Assembly: GCF_032062105.1 (NCBI RefSeq) | Contig: NW_026917963.1 | Coordinates: 62,001-126,000 of the forward strand | Reading direction: 5' to 3' | From: Saccostrea cucullata | Taxonomy: Eukaryota | Length of the DNA: 64,000 bases | Shown: piece by piece, positions 34,883-41,487 of the stretch | How the letters are laid out: each line of letters opens with the position of its first letter | Numbering within the stretch: the first letter of the stretch is position 1 | Notes under the pieces: model-generated | Told to the model about the DNA's origin: nothing | The model's database searches: none | What the model saw: only the letters and a program-made list of their open reading frames with translations | Made by a program: the position numbers and the translations under genes

Positions 34883-36250
34883 TCTTATATATATGTTACA
34901 TATGCCTTTGACAATACTAGTAATATTGTATTTTGTTTGTGCAAATATAAAAAATTCATATTTGAATTAATTATAATACTATGGGTTTATAATAATTTAT
35001 AACTGAAAGTGCATGTGTCCCGACCCCGTGAAACAACAAAAACTTTATAAGAATTCAAATCAAACATGTACCATTTTTCATGTACACGGTAAGGTGTTGA
35101 AAATAGAATTTATTTTCCGTTTTTCATTAGTTTAAAGTGTTTTACCAACATTAAAGAGTTATCCCTCTTTGCTTTCTCATAAGATTTTGTCTTGGATTAG
35201 TCGTCAGAAAAAAATTTAGCAGTTTTTCAAAGGTGTTATATTTCATGATATCACGAAATATCTAAGTGCGTAAACTACATTAATTAATCAGATGCCGCGA
35301 AAATTTGAACTCCCCCTGTCCCCCCGGCTGTGTAAAATAAAAAAAAAACGCCCTCCGAGAAAAGATGGTGTGAGCCATAAATTCCTTGATAACCTTAACA
35401 CAATGTTCATCATAAGCTCACGAAACAAACACACGAACCTTTCCTAATATTGAAAGAGTCAGTTTCATGTATATGAAGCAAATTGCCCCCCCCCCCCCCT
35501 TCTCTCTAACGATGACTTATATAACTTCAATTCAATCCAATTCATTTACTGACAACACCATTGTTGTGGAAAGAATAGAAATGCGTCTTGATCGTATAGT
35601 GGTTTATTTAGACTCTGTTATTAGAGAGGTTTAGTTACAAGTGACGTAACAACGTGTACGCGTAACATTGACGTACACGTTCTATTTGACGTCAACGTCA
35701 ATATATGATTTAGTTATACGTACACTTGTACGTATGCAAATTTCGTGATTGAACAATAAATTAATTGAACGCATTGTATTTATTATATTTAATTTAGACA
35801 AATCAATGGTGAAATGGAATTTATACTTACTTTAGTCATAGATATCATAAACAATGATCAATTATTATATGTTTTGTCATCTCAATGCAGTGAATCGCTC
35901 TAAATATTGTTACGTTTCACGAAGTGTACCTGTGAAATTCGGGTTAACTCTTGTTTACAAGTTCGGAATAAATGGACCCTGAACCCGATGTTTATAAACT
36001 ACGTACATATTTGTCAATGAACAGTTAACGAAGGAAATGAACACTAATTGATTTAATATGACTTTATTAACTTAACTTGTATAATTTAAAGACAAAGTGA
36101 TGTATTTTGTATGTTTTATATGGGTACAACGTTATTATTTTATGAGGTATTTTTGATAGTCAAAACCCGCTAACTTATTGATTGTATTGATTGTGACGTA
36201 ATATAGGTATCTGATTGTCTCTTACGTCATCATAACAACTTTTGTCTATA

Positions 36251-36709
36251 ATATGTTTTACGGTGTGACCGTTGGGGCGAGCGCAGTTGTACCATCAAAA
36301 ACACTTGAGATCAGCCACTTCGAACGTCAAGCCGCACGAGATATCTCGACTAGCTGTGACGTCATACGACGTCACAAAGCTCGTCGGAGCTTACGGAGAC
36401 AGCCGAGCGTCTGTTTGAAACTATAGAACAAGTGCATTTTTTGTCGAAAAACATTGCAGAGTTATTTCTTGTTTCTTTGAAAGATTTCTACAAACTGAAA
36501 GTCTGATATATGCTTTACGTCATTATTTATTTATTTATTCGGCAATATTCGCGCAAAGGACATTGGGTAGTGCAGGAATTCTGGGAATGTTGCACAGAGA
36601 AATTTGGCTGACGTATGTACAGATTTCAATCCGAATTTCCTCTGTTCTTACACGTTAGTCTATTGAGCTCGCTTCGCGAGCGTCGCTTCGCGACGCTCGC
36701 TGCGCTCGC
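36251..36709 (-). mobile_element. Helentron-like element inserted into the TATA box of the 5' LTR
   Basis: Absent from the 3' LTR (gtctatataaacc); TA duplicated; asymmetric inverted repeat gcgagcgcag (36277-36286) / ctgcgctcgc (36700-36709) plus a small hairpin acggt-gtg-accgt. Confidence 0.8.
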
Positions 36710-37056
36710 TATAAACCAGCTGTTTTGGGTTTAGACTTCAGTCGGCTGTGGGGAGCGACTCGGAGCACACAGCCTTCCCTGGTAAGGGAAAAGTGACCTA
36801 AGTCACTTTGGGGAACGACTCCGTATACTTCGGTTATAAGTCGGTACCAAGTCTATGTATACGAAACCATTAAGGGGACCAAGATAGTAGGAACGTCCTG
36901 TATTGACCATCGGTTGGTCACCTTTTTCTTAACCAAATAACGTTGTACCAACCAAGTTACAGTGTACCATTTTGTGTGTTTATAAATGAACCATTTGATC
37001 GTCTTAATAAATGTTATAAACTTTAAACAAATGTTATTCCTAACAAACATTATTTA

Positions 37057-37280
37057 AAGTGACCAAAAATTGGTCATTACGTCAACCAAAGAAGTGACCA
37101 AAAATTGGTCATTACGTCAACCAAAGAAGTGACCAAAAATTGGTCATTACGTCAACCAAACAAGTGACCAAAAATTGGTCATAACGTCAACCAAACAAGT
37201 GACCAAAAGTTGGTAATTCTGTTAACCAATTATAAGTGACCAAAAATTGGTAATTCCATTAAACAATTTAGTGACCAAAA
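37057..37280 (+). repeat. 35-bp tandem repeat in the LTR (4 full units in the 5' LTR, 5 in the 3' LTR at 40585-40760)
   Basis: Unit aagtgaccaaaaattggtcattacgtcaaccaaa(g/c), followed by decayed units. Confidence 0.9.
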
Positions 37281-37398
37281 TTGCTCATTAACCATTACAT
37301 AAATTGTGACCAACGGAACCATCAAATCTCGACCAAGTGACCAGAAAACTAATAGCGGCCCACGAGTTTATTACACGATACCCTCGGTCTCGTTACAT

Positions 37399-37416
37399 TG
37401 GTGGCAGCGGTGGGAT
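37399..37416 (+). promoter_or_regulatory. Primer binding site complementary to the tRNA-Leu 3' end
   Basis: tggtggcagcggtgggat, 1 nt after the LTR, is complementary to ...AUCCCACCGCUGCCACCA. Confidence 0.88.
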
Positions 37417-38784: not shown

Positions 38785-38812
38785 TTGACGTCGGCGGCCT
38801 AACGTCAACTAC
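38769..38812 (+). promoter_or_regulatory. -1 programmed ribosomal frameshift signal
   Basis: G GGA AAC in gag phase (38769-38775), 5-nt spacer, and an 11-bp perfect stem gtagttgacgt/acgtcaactac (38781-38812); the -1 frame is open into the protease. Confidence 0.88.
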
Positions 38813-39851
38813 AAAACAGAAAAGGCCACATGTTTTTGGAATAAAGAACTCAAATACTCGCAGTACCAACTTATTAACAATTGACGTGCTTGTTAACAAT
38901 GTGAAAATTAATTGTGTCATTGACACGGGTTCAGTTATAACAGTTATCCACCCAAAGAAATATTATGAGATAGAAAGATGTGTGAGACCTAAATTATTTC
39001 CGAACCATAGTAACTTACAAATGGCAAACGGCGATTTAGTTGTACCAGAAGGTCAGACTGAACTTCAAATTGATATTAATGGTGAAGTTACGGAACATAA
39101 AGTGGCCGTCGCTGACGTTGAGTCAAATATGATTCTAGGCCTTGATTTTCTTAAACAGCATAACTGTCAATTAAATTTGGGTGAAGGAACTCTTACTTTG
39201 GGAAACAAGAAGTTACCAGGTGACCTGAATAGTGAACAAAATCCTGTATTCAACATTTCCGTACAAGAAGCTGTACAACCTGATAATAGGGACCGACGAC
39301 CATGTGAACCTCGTGACGAGAAGGAGACAAACGACGCTGAGAAACATATCAGAGACTGTACCGTTGGTGACTCAAAGAAGAATCAACCAGGGGAAGTCAG
39401 AGGAAAACCGGGTCAATGTTTAGTTAGGGAACCACTGGAACAAGTGGATATTGATATCCTTGGTCATTTACCACGGACCAAGAAGGGTAACAAGTACAAT
39501 GTTACCAGTTCAGATTATTGCACCCGATGGATACAATTAACCGAGAACCAGAAACGAAAGTATGGCACCAAGTCAAACCAGATTAAGTACATCCCAGGAC
39601 AATGTGTGTGGATTGCGTCAAAGTCATGGACCAAAGGAAGATGTCCTAAATTTAAGGTTCATTGGAATGGACCTTACAAAGTGTTACGTGCCGTGTCCGA
39701 TTCGGTATTCAAAGTGAGAAAGTGTTCAGCCGAGAAACCAAAATATGTGCATCAGGACGAGATGAAGCTGTTTCGTGGTGAAGCAATAACATTATATCCG
39801 TGTAACGCGTATCTCGAAAGACATTACCAGTGGACATGTATAAGTCATTGA
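38769..39851 (+). CDS. pol: Shortened Pol: aspartic protease fused in frame to integrase fragments; RT, RNase H and most of the integrase core are missing
   Basis: CVIDTGS...ILGLDFL (retropepsin); PLEQVDIDILGHLPRTKKGNKY...DYCTRW (start of the integrase core) joined directly to NQKRKY...KFKVHWNGPYKV...YVHQDEMK (GPY/F C-terminal region); no YxDD. Confidence 0.88.
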   Translation, partial: GKRTVVDVGGLTSTTKQKRPHVFGIKNSNTRSTNLLTIDVLVNNVKINCVIDTGSVITVIHPKKYYEIERCVRPKLFPNHSNLQMANGDLVVPEGQTELQIDINGEVTEHKVAVADVESNMILGLDFLKQHNCQLNLGEGTLTLGNKKLPGDLNSEQNPVFNISVQEAVQPDNRDRRPCEPRDEKETNDAEKHIRDCTVGDSKKNQPGEVRGKPGQCLVREPLEQVDIDILGHLPRTKKGNKYNVTSSDYCTRWIQLTENQKRKYGTKSNQIKYIPGQCVWIASKSWTKGRCPKFKVHWNGPYKVLRAVSDSVFKVRKCSAEKPKYVHQDEMKLFRGEAITLYPCNAYLERHYQWTCISH

Positions 39852-39882
39852 TAAAATACCCCGAAACGAGGACGTTTCGACT

Positions 39883-39896
39883 AAAGAAGGGGGTAA
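39883..39896 (+). promoter_or_regulatory. Polypurine tract
   Basis: aaagaagggggtaa immediately before the TG of the 3' LTR. Confidence 0.85.
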
Positions 39897-41487
39897 TGTT
39901 ACGTTTCACGAAGTGTACCTGTGAAATTCGGGTTAACTCTTGTTTACAAGTTCGGAATAAATGGACCCTGAACCCGATGTTTATAAACTACGTACATATT
40001 TGTCAATGAACAGTTAACGAAGGATATGAACACTAATTGATTTAATATGACTTTATTAACTTAACTTGTATAATTTAAAGACAAAGTGATGTATTTTGTA
40101 TGTTTTATATGGGTACAACGTTATTATTTTATGAGGTATTTTTGATAGTCAAAACCCGCTAACTTATTGATTGTATTGATTGTGACGTAATATAGGTATC
40201 TGATTGTCTCTTACGTCATCATAACAACTTTTGTCTATATAAACCAGCTGTTTTGGGTTTAGACTTCAGTCGGCTGTGGGGAGCGACTCGGAGCACACAG
40301 CCTTCCCTGGTAAGGGAAAAGTGACCTAAGTCACTTTGGGGAACGACTCCGTATACTTCGGTTATAAGTCGGTACCAAGTCTATGTATACGAAACCATTA
40401 AGGGGACCAAGATAGTAGGAACGTCCTGTATTGACCATCGGTTGGTCACCTTTTTCTTAACCAAATAACGTTGTACCAACCAAGTTACAGTGTACCATTT
40501 TGTGTGTTTATAAATGAACCATTTGATCGTCTTAATAAATGTTATAAACTTTAAACAAATGTTATTCCTAACAAACATTATTTAAAGTGACCAAAAATTG
40601 GTCATTACGTCAACCAAAGAAGTGACCAAAAATTGGTCATTACGTCAACCAAAGAAGTGACCAAAAATTGGTCATTACGTCAACCAAACAAGTGACCAAA
40701 AATTGGTCATTACGTCAACCAAACAAGTGACCAAAAGTTGGTCATAACGTCAACCAAACAAGTGACCAAAAGTTGGTAATTCTGTTAACCAATTATAAGT
40801 GACCAAAAATTGGTAATTCCATTAAACAATTTAGTGACCAAAATTGCTCATTAACCATTACATAAACTGTGACCAACGGAACCATCAAATCTCGACCAAG
40901 TGACCAGAAAACTAATAGCGGCCCACGAGTTTATTACACGATACCCTCGGTCTCGTTACAATATTTTGTCACCTAGAATCTCTACAGGACAATTAAGTTT
41001 TTAATTCTGCATCACTTTAAAAATGGAAGCAATCATGAAAATTATTTATTTGACAATATAAAAAAAAACGATCACATTTTGCACTTTGTGGAGGATGAGG
41101 GGTTGGGGGGGGGGGGGTCCAAAAGAAAACCTTTTGAAAACGATAAATTGTGAAGGCTCAATCATATAACGTCTAGAAAGGAGGCATGGAATAACATTTA
41201 ATACATTAAATCATTAATACATTGTTAAAACCAAAATCAGACACCGACCCCCTTTTTTTAAATACGCGTCTGCTCTAGATCTTTACAAGTGATAGTACAA
41301 AAAAAAATAGTTAATGAAATACAATTTCAACAAGCACTTGACGTTACACATAGTCCTACTACCTATAACTTTTTAGGCGAGGGTTGTATTTTTTGTTATG
41401 TCACTAGTGCCTGTGGATGTTATATAATAGTTCTAGAATATTTTATTATAAAAAAAATAAATAAAGAATATAGAGGTGTTAAAATAC

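What the first reader, a model, noticed from the sequence alone, without database searches (positions are those of the whole stretch)
35908..40960. Young streamlined LTR element encoding Gag, protease and an integrase tail, but no RT, RNase H or integrase catalytic core
Seen: all cis signals (LTRs, ATAT TSD, tRNA-Leu PBS, PPT), an unbroken 442-aa Gag, and a Pol frame that stays open across two inferred large deletions, one between protease and the integrase zinc-finger tail and one between DYCTRW and the GPY/F region. I found only a few substitutions between the LTRs, so the insertion looks recent. The integrase remnants look diverged (second zinc Cys missing), which suggests the deletions are older than this insertion. 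Inference: a stably propagating non-autonomous family that builds and matures its own capsid while borrowing RT and integrase from a helper, and keeps a non-catalytic integrase tail under selection. It could act as a defective-interfering partner or an RNA-packaging capsid system.
Basis: partly seen in the sequence, partly recalled or inferred. Interest (0 to 1): 0.85.

Follow-up and report, generated by a model that had tools for sequence, protein, structure and literature searches.

The report
Old helper-dependent LTR retrotransposon, recent copy
This is a recently inserted copy of a mollusc-type Ty3/gypsy retrotransposon lineage that lost reverse transcriptase and the integrase core long ago but still makes its own capsid protein and protease, so it must borrow a relative's enzymes to move; this kind of parasite element is known, and its retained integrase tail is a modest new twist.

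Summary
Window 35908-40960 is an LTR element with a 4-bp ATAT target duplication, PBS, PPT and an intact 442-aa Gag. A pol frame holds only protease plus integrase remnants.

The LTRs differ by 2 substitutions in about 1,029 bp. Relative-rate tests used a full-length relative (L001, 67% Gag identity, same PBS and LTR end) and 11 outgroups. Gag and protease evolved at normal constrained rates. The zinc-finger/first-Asp remnant accumulated 13-14 own-branch replacements against 0-1. The lineage was therefore integrase-defective long before this insertion, which supports an old non-autonomous lineage.

I found no other copies and no helper; the host genome is not in the collections. Selection on the integrase tail is unresolved. 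The tail folds well and the frame stays open (P about 0.002-0.03 if neutral). An independent Gag-PR-IN-tail family in Diaphorina citri conserves that block at DNA level, which also fits a cis-acting role. I rate this a new variant of a known kind, of moderate interest.

The parts
35904..35907 (.). Left target-site duplication ATAT
   Evidence: Read directly from the sequence; it matches 40961-40964.
35908..37397 (+). 5' LTR (1,490 bp, TG...CA), interrupted by a nested insertion
   Evidence: Alignment with the 3' LTR shows 2 substitutions, one 35-bp unit difference and a 461-bp extra block.
36251..36709 (.). Nested post-integration insertion (459 bp plus a TA overlap) at the TATATAAA motif of the 5' LTR. 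It has GC-rich palindromes and a 14-bp tandem at its 3' end. Unclassified.
   Evidence: It is absent from the 3' LTR. The equivalent interval of the relative's LTR is no longer than the window's uninterrupted one. Inverted and tandem repeats. No other copy in the window.
37057..37290 (+). 35-bp tandem array in the LTR: 6.7 units here and 7.7 units at 40585-40853 in the 3' LTR
   Evidence: Tandem Repeats Finder; LTR alignment.
37399..37416 (+). Primer-binding site TGGTGGCAGCGGTGGGAT
   Evidence: It lies one base after the LTR. The same LTR-end-plus-PBS string follows the LTR of full-length relative L004, and the shared 25-nt string of LTR end plus PBS also recurs in 7 metagenome loci. Its assignment to tRNA-Leu rests on memory; the window has no tRNA gene.
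37456..38784 (+). Gag ORF, 442 aa (capsid-like Retrotrans_gag/PEG10 N-capsid domain plus CCHC zinc knuckle)
   Evidence: ORF list; Pfam; 66-69% identical to the Gag of full-length relatives; dN/dS 0.14 against L001; balanced relative rates.
38769..38775 (+). -1 frameshift slippery heptamer G GGA AAC, in phase with gag, 7 nt before the gag stop
   Evidence: The pol frame opens at 38763 and overlaps gag by 22 nt. PEG10 uses the same heptamer (PMC10570562).
38781..38812 (+). Hairpin with an 11-bp main stem, 5 nt downstream of the slippery site
   Evidence: RNA fold: -20 kcal/mol for the 86-nt stretch, z = -2.1. The same hairpin is in L001 at about 1450-1485.
38763..39851 (+). Truncated pol frame. 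The predicted Gag-Pol fusion is about 798 aa.
   Evidence: Translation without a stop. The fusion was not joined for any search; gag and pol were searched apart.
38868..39236 (+). Retropepsin (protease) domain with DTG at 38922-38930
   Evidence: Pfam gag-asp_proteas, 32 bits. AlphaFold pLDDT above 90. Foldseek hits to DDI1, EIAV and HIV proteases, E about 1e-8. Balanced relative rates.
39282..39344 (+). Probable remnant of the RNase H C-terminal end (PDxLSRxPC motif, here PDNRDRRPC)
   Evidence: BLASTP to L001 Pol 652-675; MSA column match to a motif shared by 9 outgroups. The DNA-level score is only about 3 sd above shuffles. Modelled as unstructured.
39345..39536 (+). Decayed remnant of the second half of the integrase H2C2 zinc finger and the first 35 residues of the catalytic core (first Asp kept). 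It now acts as an in-frame linker.
   Evidence: Corresponds to L001 nt 4131-4323 at 75% nt identity. Own-branch replacements 13:1 and 14:0. It keeps 13 of 24 highly conserved columns against 21 of 24 in L001. pLDDT about 45-60.
39537..39782 (+). Integrase C-terminal SH3-like domain (Integrase_p58_C, GPY/F region)
   Evidence: Corresponds to L001 nt 4821-5073. Pfam 27.0 bits against 29.6 in L001. pLDDT 92-95 with five strands. It keeps 12 of 16 highly conserved columns against 13 of 16 in L001.
39863..39893 (+). Conserved hairpin GAAACGAGGACGTTTC followed by the polypurine tract AAAGAAGGGGG
   Evidence: 91% identical to L001 6118-6150. A similar motif precedes the PPT in the D. citri elements.
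39897..40960 (+). 3' LTR (1,064 bp, TG...CA), the uninterrupted form
40961..40964 (.). Right target-site duplication ATAT
   Evidence: Read directly from the sequence.

Best explanation
The element is a recent insertion from an old, helper-dependent (non-autonomous) Ty3/gypsy lineage.

Shown:
- It has complete cis signals: LTRs, PBS, PPT and TSD.
- It encodes Gag. Through a canonical -1 frameshift signal it also encodes a Gag-protease fusion of about 798 aa, which continues in frame through decayed RNase H and integrase remnants into the integrase C-terminal SH3-like domain.
- It has no RT, no RNase H and no integrase core.
- Its lineage lost integrase function long before this copy inserted, while Gag and protease stayed under purifying selection.

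Inferred:
- Its RNA is transcribed from the LTR and translated into Gag and Gag-PR-tail.
- These build and mature particles that package the element's own RNA.
- Reverse transcription, primed at the shared PBS, and integration are done by RT and integrase from an autonomous relative co-assembled in the same particle.
- Gag and protease are kept because they give the parasite its share of particles.
- The integrase tail is kept either as a protein module (for example, contact with the helper's integrase or with nucleic acid) or because its DNA/RNA is needed in cis next to the PPT.

This particular copy has since taken a 459-bp insertion at the TATA motif of its 5' LTR.
For: Anatomy:
- Structure and cis signals.
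- Missing domains mapped against the full-length relative L001. The net deletions of 2,127 and 501 nt are both in frame, and the second junction is clean with microhomology.
- No RT anywhere in the window.
- Frameshift site and hairpin, conserved in L001.
- The full-length relative L004 shares the LTR end and PBS, an identical 29-nt string.

Age and constraint:
- LTR divergence is 2 substitutions in about 1,029 bp.
- Relative-rate counts (own branch: L001 branch): Gag 24:27 and 17:17; PR 8:8 and 11:9; IN zinc-finger remnant 13:1 and 14:0 (majority outgroup 11:0, p=0.001; against Gag+PR, Fisher p=0.0006).
- The substitution spectrum is mixed, so this is not editing.
- dN/dS against L001 is 0.14 for Gag and 0.22 for PR.
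- The post-protease frame of 191 codons would stay stop-free with P about 0.03 at d=0.1 and 0.002 at d=0.18 if neutral.
- PR and IN-C are modelled with pLDDT above 90 and the linker below 60.

Independent parallel in Diaphorina citri:
- LTR elements there carry one contiguous Gag-PR-IN-C ORF with no RT or integrase core.
- Three copies were checked. Their LTR pairs are 99.8-99.9% identical and their TSDs differ (ATAT, ATAA, ATAC).
- About 25 annotated paralogues exist.
- Between-copy pN/pS is 0.33-0.43.
- An autonomous partner sits in the same genome.
Against: - Only one copy of this element was seen, and no helper. The host genome is not in the searchable collections, so "family" rests on rate arguments, not on counted copies.
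- The nearest relatives are only 66-71% identical, so events on the window branch cannot be dated finely.
- The estimate of neutral divergence since loss of integrase (d about 0.1-0.2) comes from 64 codons.
- The own-branch excess in the IN-C domain (10:3, 7:3) is statistically compatible with both constraint and decay.
- Recombination with a helper could make Gag-PR look constrained without selection on the parasite itself.
- This copy's 5' LTR is disrupted at its TATA motif, so it may no longer be active.
Confidence: 0.7

Rival explanations
1. Mosaic origin. The 5' half (LTR-leader-gag-protease) was recently copied from a functional autonomous element by template switching between co-packaged RNAs. 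It was joined to an old, decayed 3' half. On this reading the apparent constraint on Gag and protease reflects the helper's selection, not selection on the parasite.
For: - There is a sharp contrast between balanced rates in Gag and PR and a 13:1 excess in the adjacent remnant.
- In Diaphorina citri different segments of the non-autonomous element have very different distances to the autonomous partner (pS 0.57, 0.49 and 0.04). This shows patchy exchange or patchy constraint in such pairs.
Against: - It still needs a long-lived defective 3' half that stays mobilisable, so it is a variant of the main explanation rather than an alternative to non-autonomy.
- It does not explain why 191 post-protease codons stay stop-free.
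- No donor is available to test it.
Confidence: 0.15
2. One-off defective copy. The deletions arose by RT template jumps in the replication cycle that produced this insertion, or just before it. The open frame is luck, with about a 1 in 9 chance that two deletions are both in frame.
For: - The second junction is clean and sits on microhomology.
- Only a single copy was seen.
- Internally deleted LTR elements are common (PMC3286476).
Against: - The integrase remnant carries 13-14 own-branch replacements at sites conserved in L001 and the outgroups, including a zinc-binding Cys and the GPLP and DYFTRW motifs.
- The LTRs differ by only 0.2%.
- A functional integrase is unlikely to tolerate these changes, so function was lost long before the insertion.
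Confidence: 0.07
3. Post-insertion decay. A full-length element inserted here and later lost its internal parts by genomic deletions.
For: This copy did suffer one post-insertion event, the 459-bp insertion in the 5' LTR, and a 35-bp unit change.
Against: - The remnants show roughly 0.1-0.2 substitutions per site of relaxed evolution while the LTRs show 0.002.
- Gag and PR show no matching decay.
Confidence: 0.02
4. The integrase tail is kept for its nucleotide sequence rather than its protein. It could be a cis-acting element next to the PPT, or a stretch kept matched to the helper by recombination. The open frame would then be incidental.
For: - In D. citri the 71 IN-C codons of the non-autonomous element differ from the autonomous partner by 0 nonsynonymous and 2 synonymous changes (pS 0.04). 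In Gag and PR pS is about 0.5, and the LTRs are only 87% identical.
- Copies of that family show 0-1 changes in the block.
- The PPT-proximal hairpin is conserved across lineages.
Against: - Between the window element and L001, IN-C synonymous sites are saturated (pS 0.85) while hallmark residues are kept. No DNA-level conservation is visible at that distance.
- The decayed linker would not need to stay in frame.
- The domain still folds confidently.
Confidence: 0.35

Closest known systems
Gag-retaining non-autonomous derivatives of plant Ty3/gypsy families, e.g. tea-tree TEL001 groups 2-3 (bioRxiv 10.1101/2020.01.02.892430)
   Same: The LTRs and priming signals are intact, gag is retained, and pol domains are lost. 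These elements are presumed to be mobilised by full-length members. The paper discusses the idea that such elements drain the helper's proteins.
   Different: - Those are counted families (1,063 gag-only copies) within one plant genome with the helper at hand. Here there is one animal copy with no helper seen.
- The window element also keeps an intact protease, a frameshift signal and the integrase C-terminal domain in frame.
LARD / TRIM / MaLR-type non-autonomous LTR elements (PMC3286476, PMC5718144)
   Same: They are helper-dependent LTR elements that keep only what is needed in cis.
   Different: These classes have no coding capacity. The window element encodes a conserved Gag and protease. 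PMC5718144 notes that LARD/TRIM types are not prominent in animals.
Diaphorina citri Gag-PR-IN-C LTR family (found here: L014, L016, L017; proteins P0183, P0190, P0192 and about 22 more)
   Same: - An LTR element of about 4.7 kb.
- One polyprotein of about 795 aa: Gag, CCHC, protease, a decayed linker with an RNase H remnant, and the integrase C-terminal SH3 domain.
- TG...CA LTRs, a 4-bp ATAN target duplication, and a hairpin before the PPT.
- Evidence of purifying selection on Gag.
   Different: - It is an insect, not a mollusc.
- It has a single ORF without a frameshift and an extra N-terminal SAP domain.
- Multiple copies and an autonomous partner are documented.
- Its IN-C block is nearly identical in DNA to the partner's.
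PEG10 (domesticated Ty3/gypsy Gag-protease gene; PMC10570562)
   Same: Gag plus protease are expressed through a -1 frameshift at the same GGGAAAC heptamer just before the gag stop. RT, RNase H and integrase are lost.
   Different: PEG10 has no LTRs and is a fixed host gene. The window element has near-identical LTRs, a TSD, a PBS and a PPT, so it is a mobile insertion. PEG10 has no integrase tail.
Deleted but successful endogenous-retrovirus forms: IAP I-delta-1, ETn/MusD, HERV-H (from my own knowledge, not checked here)
   Same: Internally deleted LTR elements amplify with proteins supplied in trans, sometimes better than the full-length form.
   Different: They are vertebrate retrovirus-derived, with different deletions. 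None is known to me to keep specifically protease plus the integrase C-terminal domain.

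Membership tests
LTR retrotransposon (structural definition) | Two direct long terminal repeats ending TG...CA, flanked by a short target-site duplication | tested here: met
   LTRs 35908-37397 and 39897-40960; ATAT on both sides.
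LTR retrotransposon (structural definition) | Primer-binding site next to the 5' LTR and a polypurine tract next to the 3' LTR | tested here: met
   PBS 37399-37416 starts with TGG. The identical LTR-end-plus-PBS string is in L004, and its 25-nt core recurs in 7 metagenome loci. PPT at 39883-39893. The tRNA-Leu assignment is from memory only.
Ty3/gypsy (Metaviridae) lineage | Pol order protease-RT-RNase H-integrase, with gypsy-type Gag and integrase domains | tested here: inconclusive
   The order is met in the full-length relative L001 (RVT_1, RT_RNaseH, Integrase_H2C2, rve, Integrase_p58_C). In the window only protease, remnants and IN-C remain, in that order. No phylogeny against reference clades was possible.
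Autonomous LTR retrotransposon | Encodes its own reverse transcriptase, RNase H and catalytic integrase | tested here: not met
   No Pfam RT, RNase H or rve hit. The L001 Pol matches only at residues 1-188, 895-962 and 1126-1211.
LARD/TRIM (non-coding non-autonomous LTR elements) | No protein-coding capacity between the LTRs | tested here: not met
   Intact 442-aa Gag and protease under purifying selection.
Gag-retaining non-autonomous LTR family | Cis signals are intact, gag is kept, and at least RT and integrase are lost | tested here: met
Gag-retaining non-autonomous LTR family | Several copies share the same internal junctions at different sites | not testable with these tools
   No second copy in the window. 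No match to the junction in the metagenome or viral collections. No Gag above 70% identity in the protein collection.
Gag-retaining non-autonomous LTR family | Loss of pol functions predates the insertion, i.e. propagation as a defective lineage | tested here: met
   Relative-rate excess of 13:1 and 14:0 in the integrase remnant, against balanced Gag and PR, with 0.2% LTR divergence.
Gag-retaining non-autonomous LTR family | An autonomous partner with matching LTR ends and PBS in the same genome | not testable with these tools
   A partner-like full-length relative with the same PBS and LTR end exists, but in other samples (L001-L006) and at 67% Gag identity.
PEG10-like domesticated Gag-protease gene | Gag and protease joined by a -1 frameshift at GGGAAAC | tested here: met
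   Heptamer at 38769-38775 in phase, with a downstream hairpin. Sequence level only; frameshifting was not assayed.
PEG10-like domesticated Gag-protease gene | Loss of LTRs and fixation as a single-copy host gene | tested here: not met
   Near-identical LTRs, a TSD, a PBS and a PPT are present.
Defective-interfering or trans-dominant Gag restrictor (Ty1 p22, Fv1, enJS56A1 type) | Lowers the helper's transposition | not testable with these tools
   No functional data. This is only the general argument that non-autonomous copies consume helper proteins (10.1101/2020.01.02.892430).

The most novel reading that the evidence does not exclude
Gag-protease-integrase-C-terminal-domain is a selected protein module that defines a recurrent class of capsid-making parasitic LTR elements in animals. 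It has been seen independently in a mollusc-type lineage and in a psyllid. On this reading the element builds and matures its own particles, and it uses the SH3-like integrase tail on a fraction of its Gag (set by frameshifting) to dock onto the helper's integrase, intasome or nucleic acid. That docking would secure reverse transcription and integration of its own RNA.
Probability: 0.25. Interest if true: 0.65.

Novelty: new variant of a known kind. Interest (0 to 1): 0.45.

Why it matters
Helper-dependent LTR elements are usually pictured as non-coding shells (LARD, TRIM) or as gag-only derivatives, mostly in plants. This animal lineage kept Gag and protease under purifying selection long after it lost RT and integrase.

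That argues the parasite gains from making and maturing its own capsid rather than stealing the helper's. It is also the architecture from which domesticated Gag-protease genes such as PEG10 could arise, down to the same frameshift heptamer.

The repeated retention of the last 70-85 integrase codons in two unrelated hosts poses a concrete, testable question: is that block a docking domain or a cis-acting sequence?

The work also gives two practical warnings:
- Many database "protease plus integrase-tail" proteins are gene-model artefacts laid over full-length elements.
- A single-copy relative-rate test can date loss of function without access to the genome.

Tried and rejected
Searches that found no copy or helper:
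- Exact look-up of the Gag found nothing on record.
- The Gag homologue search gave a best hit of 69% identity, so the host genome is not represented.
- A search for short Pol-like proteins (195-620 aa) with the same deleted layout gave only two partial hits.
- The exact deletion-2 junction string had no match in the metagenome or viral collections.
- The string of LTR end plus PBS found 7 metagenome loci, but all are distant elements with at most 39% Pol identity. It found none in the viral contigs.
- Gag against bacterial and archaeal genome contigs (to catch contaminant contigs) found nothing.
- ENA-derived relatives P0004, P0205 and P0207 could not be fetched. This includes a 4,456-bp contig that holds a 455-aa Gag and only a 138-aa protease ORF.

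Leads that turned out to be artefacts:
- The Sinanodonta protein P0040 (PR plus IN, no RT) is a spliced gene model.
- The beetle proteins P0275 and P0257 (PR plus IN-C only) are spliced gene models laid over full-length elements.
- These proteins were dropped as evidence for the class. P0040 was kept only as one of 11 outgroups for segments that are real coding sequence; results are the same with the others.

Other checks:
- The mixed substitution spectrum rejects hypermutation or editing as the cause of the decayed remnant.
- Rfam and tRNA scans of the window found nothing.
- A PDB sequence search with IN-C found nothing.
- I could not classify the nested 459-bp insertion. It has no terminal inverted repeats and only a subterminal GC-rich palindrome.

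Limits I kept to:
- The Gag-Pol frameshift product was not joined for any search.
- No contig looked human.

Full report
**What is there**

Window 35908-40960 is an LTR retrotransposon.
- The 5' LTR runs 35908-37397 and the 3' LTR 39897-40960. Both begin TG and end CA.
- ATAT lies on each flank (35904-35907 and 40961-40964).
- One base after the 5' LTR comes an 18-nt primer-binding site (37399-37416).
- Just before the 3' LTR comes a polypurine tract (39883-39893), preceded by a small hairpin (39863-39878).
- The window has no N, is 34.6% G+C, and holds no second copy of any part of the element.

The LTRs differ by two substitutions over about 1,029 alignable positions, so the insertion is young. 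They are not otherwise alike.
- The 5' LTR carries an extra 459-bp block plus a TA overlap (about 36251-36709), placed inside the TATATAAA motif.
- The 3' LTR has 7.7 rather than 6.7 units of a 35-bp tandem repeat.
- The relative's LTR shows no room for such a block in the equivalent interval, so it is a nested insertion that arrived after integration.
- I could not classify the block.

**Coding content**

- Gag (37456-38784, 442 aa) is unbroken, with a Retrotrans_gag/PEG10-type capsid domain and a CCHC knuckle.
- The pol frame is the -1 frame. It opens at 38763, overlaps gag by 22 nt and runs to 39851.
- Within the overlap lies G GGA AAC (38769-38775), in the correct phase. A hairpin with an 11-bp main stem follows 5 nt downstream.
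- The hairpin is conserved in the full-length relative. PEG10 uses the same heptamer (PMC10570562).
- Pfam finds only a retropepsin and Integrase_p58_C in the pol frame.

**The full-length relative and the deletions**

The closest Gag proteins in 5.8 billion sequences are only 66-69% identical. One of them lies on Logan contigs L001-L006.
- L001 has gag, a pol of 1,218 codons from the slip site (protease, RT, RNase H, H2C2 zinc finger, rve core, Integrase_p58_C) and a third ORF.
- L004 shows the same LTR end and PBS as the window element, an identical 29-nt string.

blastn and BLASTP map the window's internal region onto L001 as follows:

| Window | L001 | Content |
|---|---|---|
| 37399-39275 | 32-1938 | leader, gag, protease |
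| 39341-39533 | 4131-4323 | second half of the zinc finger to the DYxTRW motif just past the first catalytic Asp |
| 39530-39782 | 4821-5073 | integrase C-terminal domain |
| 39863-39896 | 6118-6150 | PPT region, 91% identical |

- The net losses, 2,127 and 501 nt, are both multiples of three.
- The second junction is clean and sits on a short microhomology.
- Inside the first gap, 21 codons (39282-39344) align with the conserved PDxLSRxPC motif at the end of RNase H. The first "deletion" is therefore probably two events, though the DNA-level support is weak.

**How old are the deletions?**

With no other copy available, I used three-way relative-rate counts. The window element and L001 were each compared with each of 11 more distant full-length Pols, and with 10 more distant Gags. 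I counted sites where one of the pair differs while the other agrees with the outgroup.

| Segment | Window branch : L001 branch |
|---|---|
| Gag | 24:27, 17:17, 12:13 and similar |
| Protease | 8:8, 11:9 |
| Zinc-finger/first-Asp remnant | 13:1, 14:0 (8-14 against 0-2 for all outgroups; 11:0 against the outgroup majority, p=0.001) |
| RNase H-end remnant | 3-4 : 0-1 |
| IN C-terminal domain | 10:3, 7:3 |

- The remnant against Gag plus protease gives Fisher p=0.0006.
- The changes hit residues conserved throughout the clade: the zinc Cys, GPLP and DYFTRW.
- The changes are of mixed types, so editing is not the cause.
- At L001-outgroup conserved sites, 37% are replaced in the window element. 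If neutral, that needs roughly 0.1-0.2 substitutions per site, which is 50-100 times the LTR divergence.
- The lineage was therefore integrase-defective long before this copy inserted, while Gag (dN/dS 0.14) and protease (0.22) stayed constrained.
- This excludes post-insertion deletion and makes a one-cycle accident unlikely.

**Is the integrase tail selected?**

The evidence is mixed.

In favour:
- The 191 codons after the protease have no stop. Given their codon content, the chance of that is about 0.03 at d=0.1 and 0.002 at d=0.18, before counting frameshifts.
- The C-terminal domain scores 27.0 bits against 29.6 in L001.
- It keeps 12 of 16 highly conserved columns against 13 of 16 in L001.
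- It is modelled as a five-stranded barrel at pLDDT 92-95. The remnants between it and the protease are unstructured (pLDDT about 45-60), and the protease is at 91-98.
- Foldseek confirms the retropepsin fold.

Against, or neutral:
- The domain's own-branch excess (10:3, 7:3) cannot be told apart statistically from either the balanced or the decayed class.

**An independent parallel**

The all-against-all HMMER search turned up P0183, a 796-aa protein from Diaphorina citri. It has SAP, Gag, CCHC, protease and the integrase C-terminal domain, and nothing else.
- The gene is one contiguous ORF inside an LTR element of about 4.7 kb.
- Two further copies on other scaffolds have the same layout. 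Their LTR pairs are 99.8-99.9% identical, and the three TSDs are ATAT, ATAA and ATAC.
- About 25 annotated paralogues of 791-832 aa share the domain set.
- Copies differ by 6-11% at synonymous sites. pN/pS is 0.33-0.43 overall, 0.2-0.37 in Gag and 0.6-0.95 in the linker.
- An autonomous partner sits in the same genome (L020: gag, a 1,167-aa pol, 976-bp LTRs).
- Against that partner, the defective family shows balanced rates in protease and a strong own-branch excess in the linker, which includes a decayed RNase H remnant. This is the same pattern as in the window.
- Its 71 IN-C codons differ from the partner by no nonsynonymous and only 2 synonymous changes (pS 0.04, against about 0.5 in Gag and protease; LTRs 87% identical).
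- That result points to DNA-level conservation or recent exchange with the helper. It keeps a cis-acting explanation for the tail alive.

**Cautions about database proteins**

Many arthropod and bivalve proteins appear to have protease plus integrase tail without RT. The three I checked from Sinanodonta, Aromia and Exocentrus are spliced gene models laid over full-length elements. They are artefacts and I do not count them.

**Comparison with what is known**

- Non-coding LARD, TRIM and MaLR elements are the textbook non-autonomous LTR classes. They are said to be less prominent in animals (PMC3286476, PMC5718144).
- Gag-retaining derivatives are documented in plants, for example 1,063 gag-only copies of tea-tree TEL001 (10.1101/2020.01.02.892430).
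- From my own knowledge, deleted IAP, ETn and HERV-H forms also spread in trans.
- The window element is therefore a known kind of thing.
- Three aspects go beyond what my limited literature searches found: the evidence of long-term constraint on Gag and protease in a defective animal lineage, the PEG10-like frameshift expression, and the repeated retention of the integrase C-terminal block.

**Limits**

- I saw one copy, found no helper and did not identify the host.
- The PBS assignment to tRNA-Leu is from memory.
- The time estimates rest on 64 codons and a 67%-identical relative.

**Verdict**

The old non-autonomous lineage with constrained Gag and protease is supported. Family size, the helper and the role of the tail remain open.
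- I rate it a new variant of a known kind, with interest 0.45.

Noticed in passing
window 36251-36709: A 459-bp block (plus a TA overlap) sits inside the TATATAAA motif of the 5' LTR only. It has GC-rich palindromes and a 14-bp tandem at its 3' end (36665-36705), no terminal inverted repeats, and no other copy in the window. It is probably a small nested mobile element of unknown class, and it may have silenced this copy.
   Followed up: partly
window 37057-37290 and 40585-40853: A 35-bp tandem array lies in the downstream part of each LTR (6.7 against 7.7 units). Each unit holds the palindrome TGACCAAAAATTGGTCA and a TTACGTCA (CRE-like) motif.
   Followed up: no
window 38769-38812: A textbook -1 frameshift cassette: GGGAAAC, a 5-nt spacer and a hairpin with an 11-bp main stem. 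In the full-length relative L001 the hairpin is conserved but the heptamer reads GGAAAAC.
   Followed up: partly
L001 5173-6105: The full-length relative carries, after pol, a run of about 20 A followed by a 285-aa ORF with weak C2H2/TRAF-type zinc-finger hits. This looks like a transduced host retrocopy rather than an env gene. It is present in three samples (L001-L003).
   Followed up: partly
window 25106-25681 (minus strand): An open frame with a strong SURP module hit (E=3.5e-22). It is probably an exon of a host splicing-factor gene, and it was the only host-gene signal among the long ORFs of the window.
   Followed up: no
L014 4760-9458, L016, L017, L020 (Diaphorina citri): A multi-copy non-autonomous Gag-PR-IN-C LTR family and its autonomous partner. 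The IN-C block is nearly DNA-identical between the two (pS 0.04), while the LTRs are 87% identical and gag and PR synonymous sites differ by about 50%.
   Followed up: yes
L015, L018, L019 (Sinanodonta, Aromia, Exocentrus): Annotated proteins that seem to have protease plus integrase tail without RT are spliced gene models that skip the RT-to-integrase-core part of full-length elements. This is a recurrent annotation artefact in these assemblies.
   Followed up: yes
window 39863-39878; L001 6118-6133; L014 about 8488-8505: A short hairpin (GAAACGAGGACGTTTC, or TTCGAGGACGAA in D. citri) sits a few bases 5' of the PPT in the mollusc-type and the psyllid elements. Both groups also have TGTTAC...GTAACA-like LTR ends and ATAN 4-bp target duplications. 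This suggests one broad gypsy clade with an AT-rich target preference.
   Followed up: no
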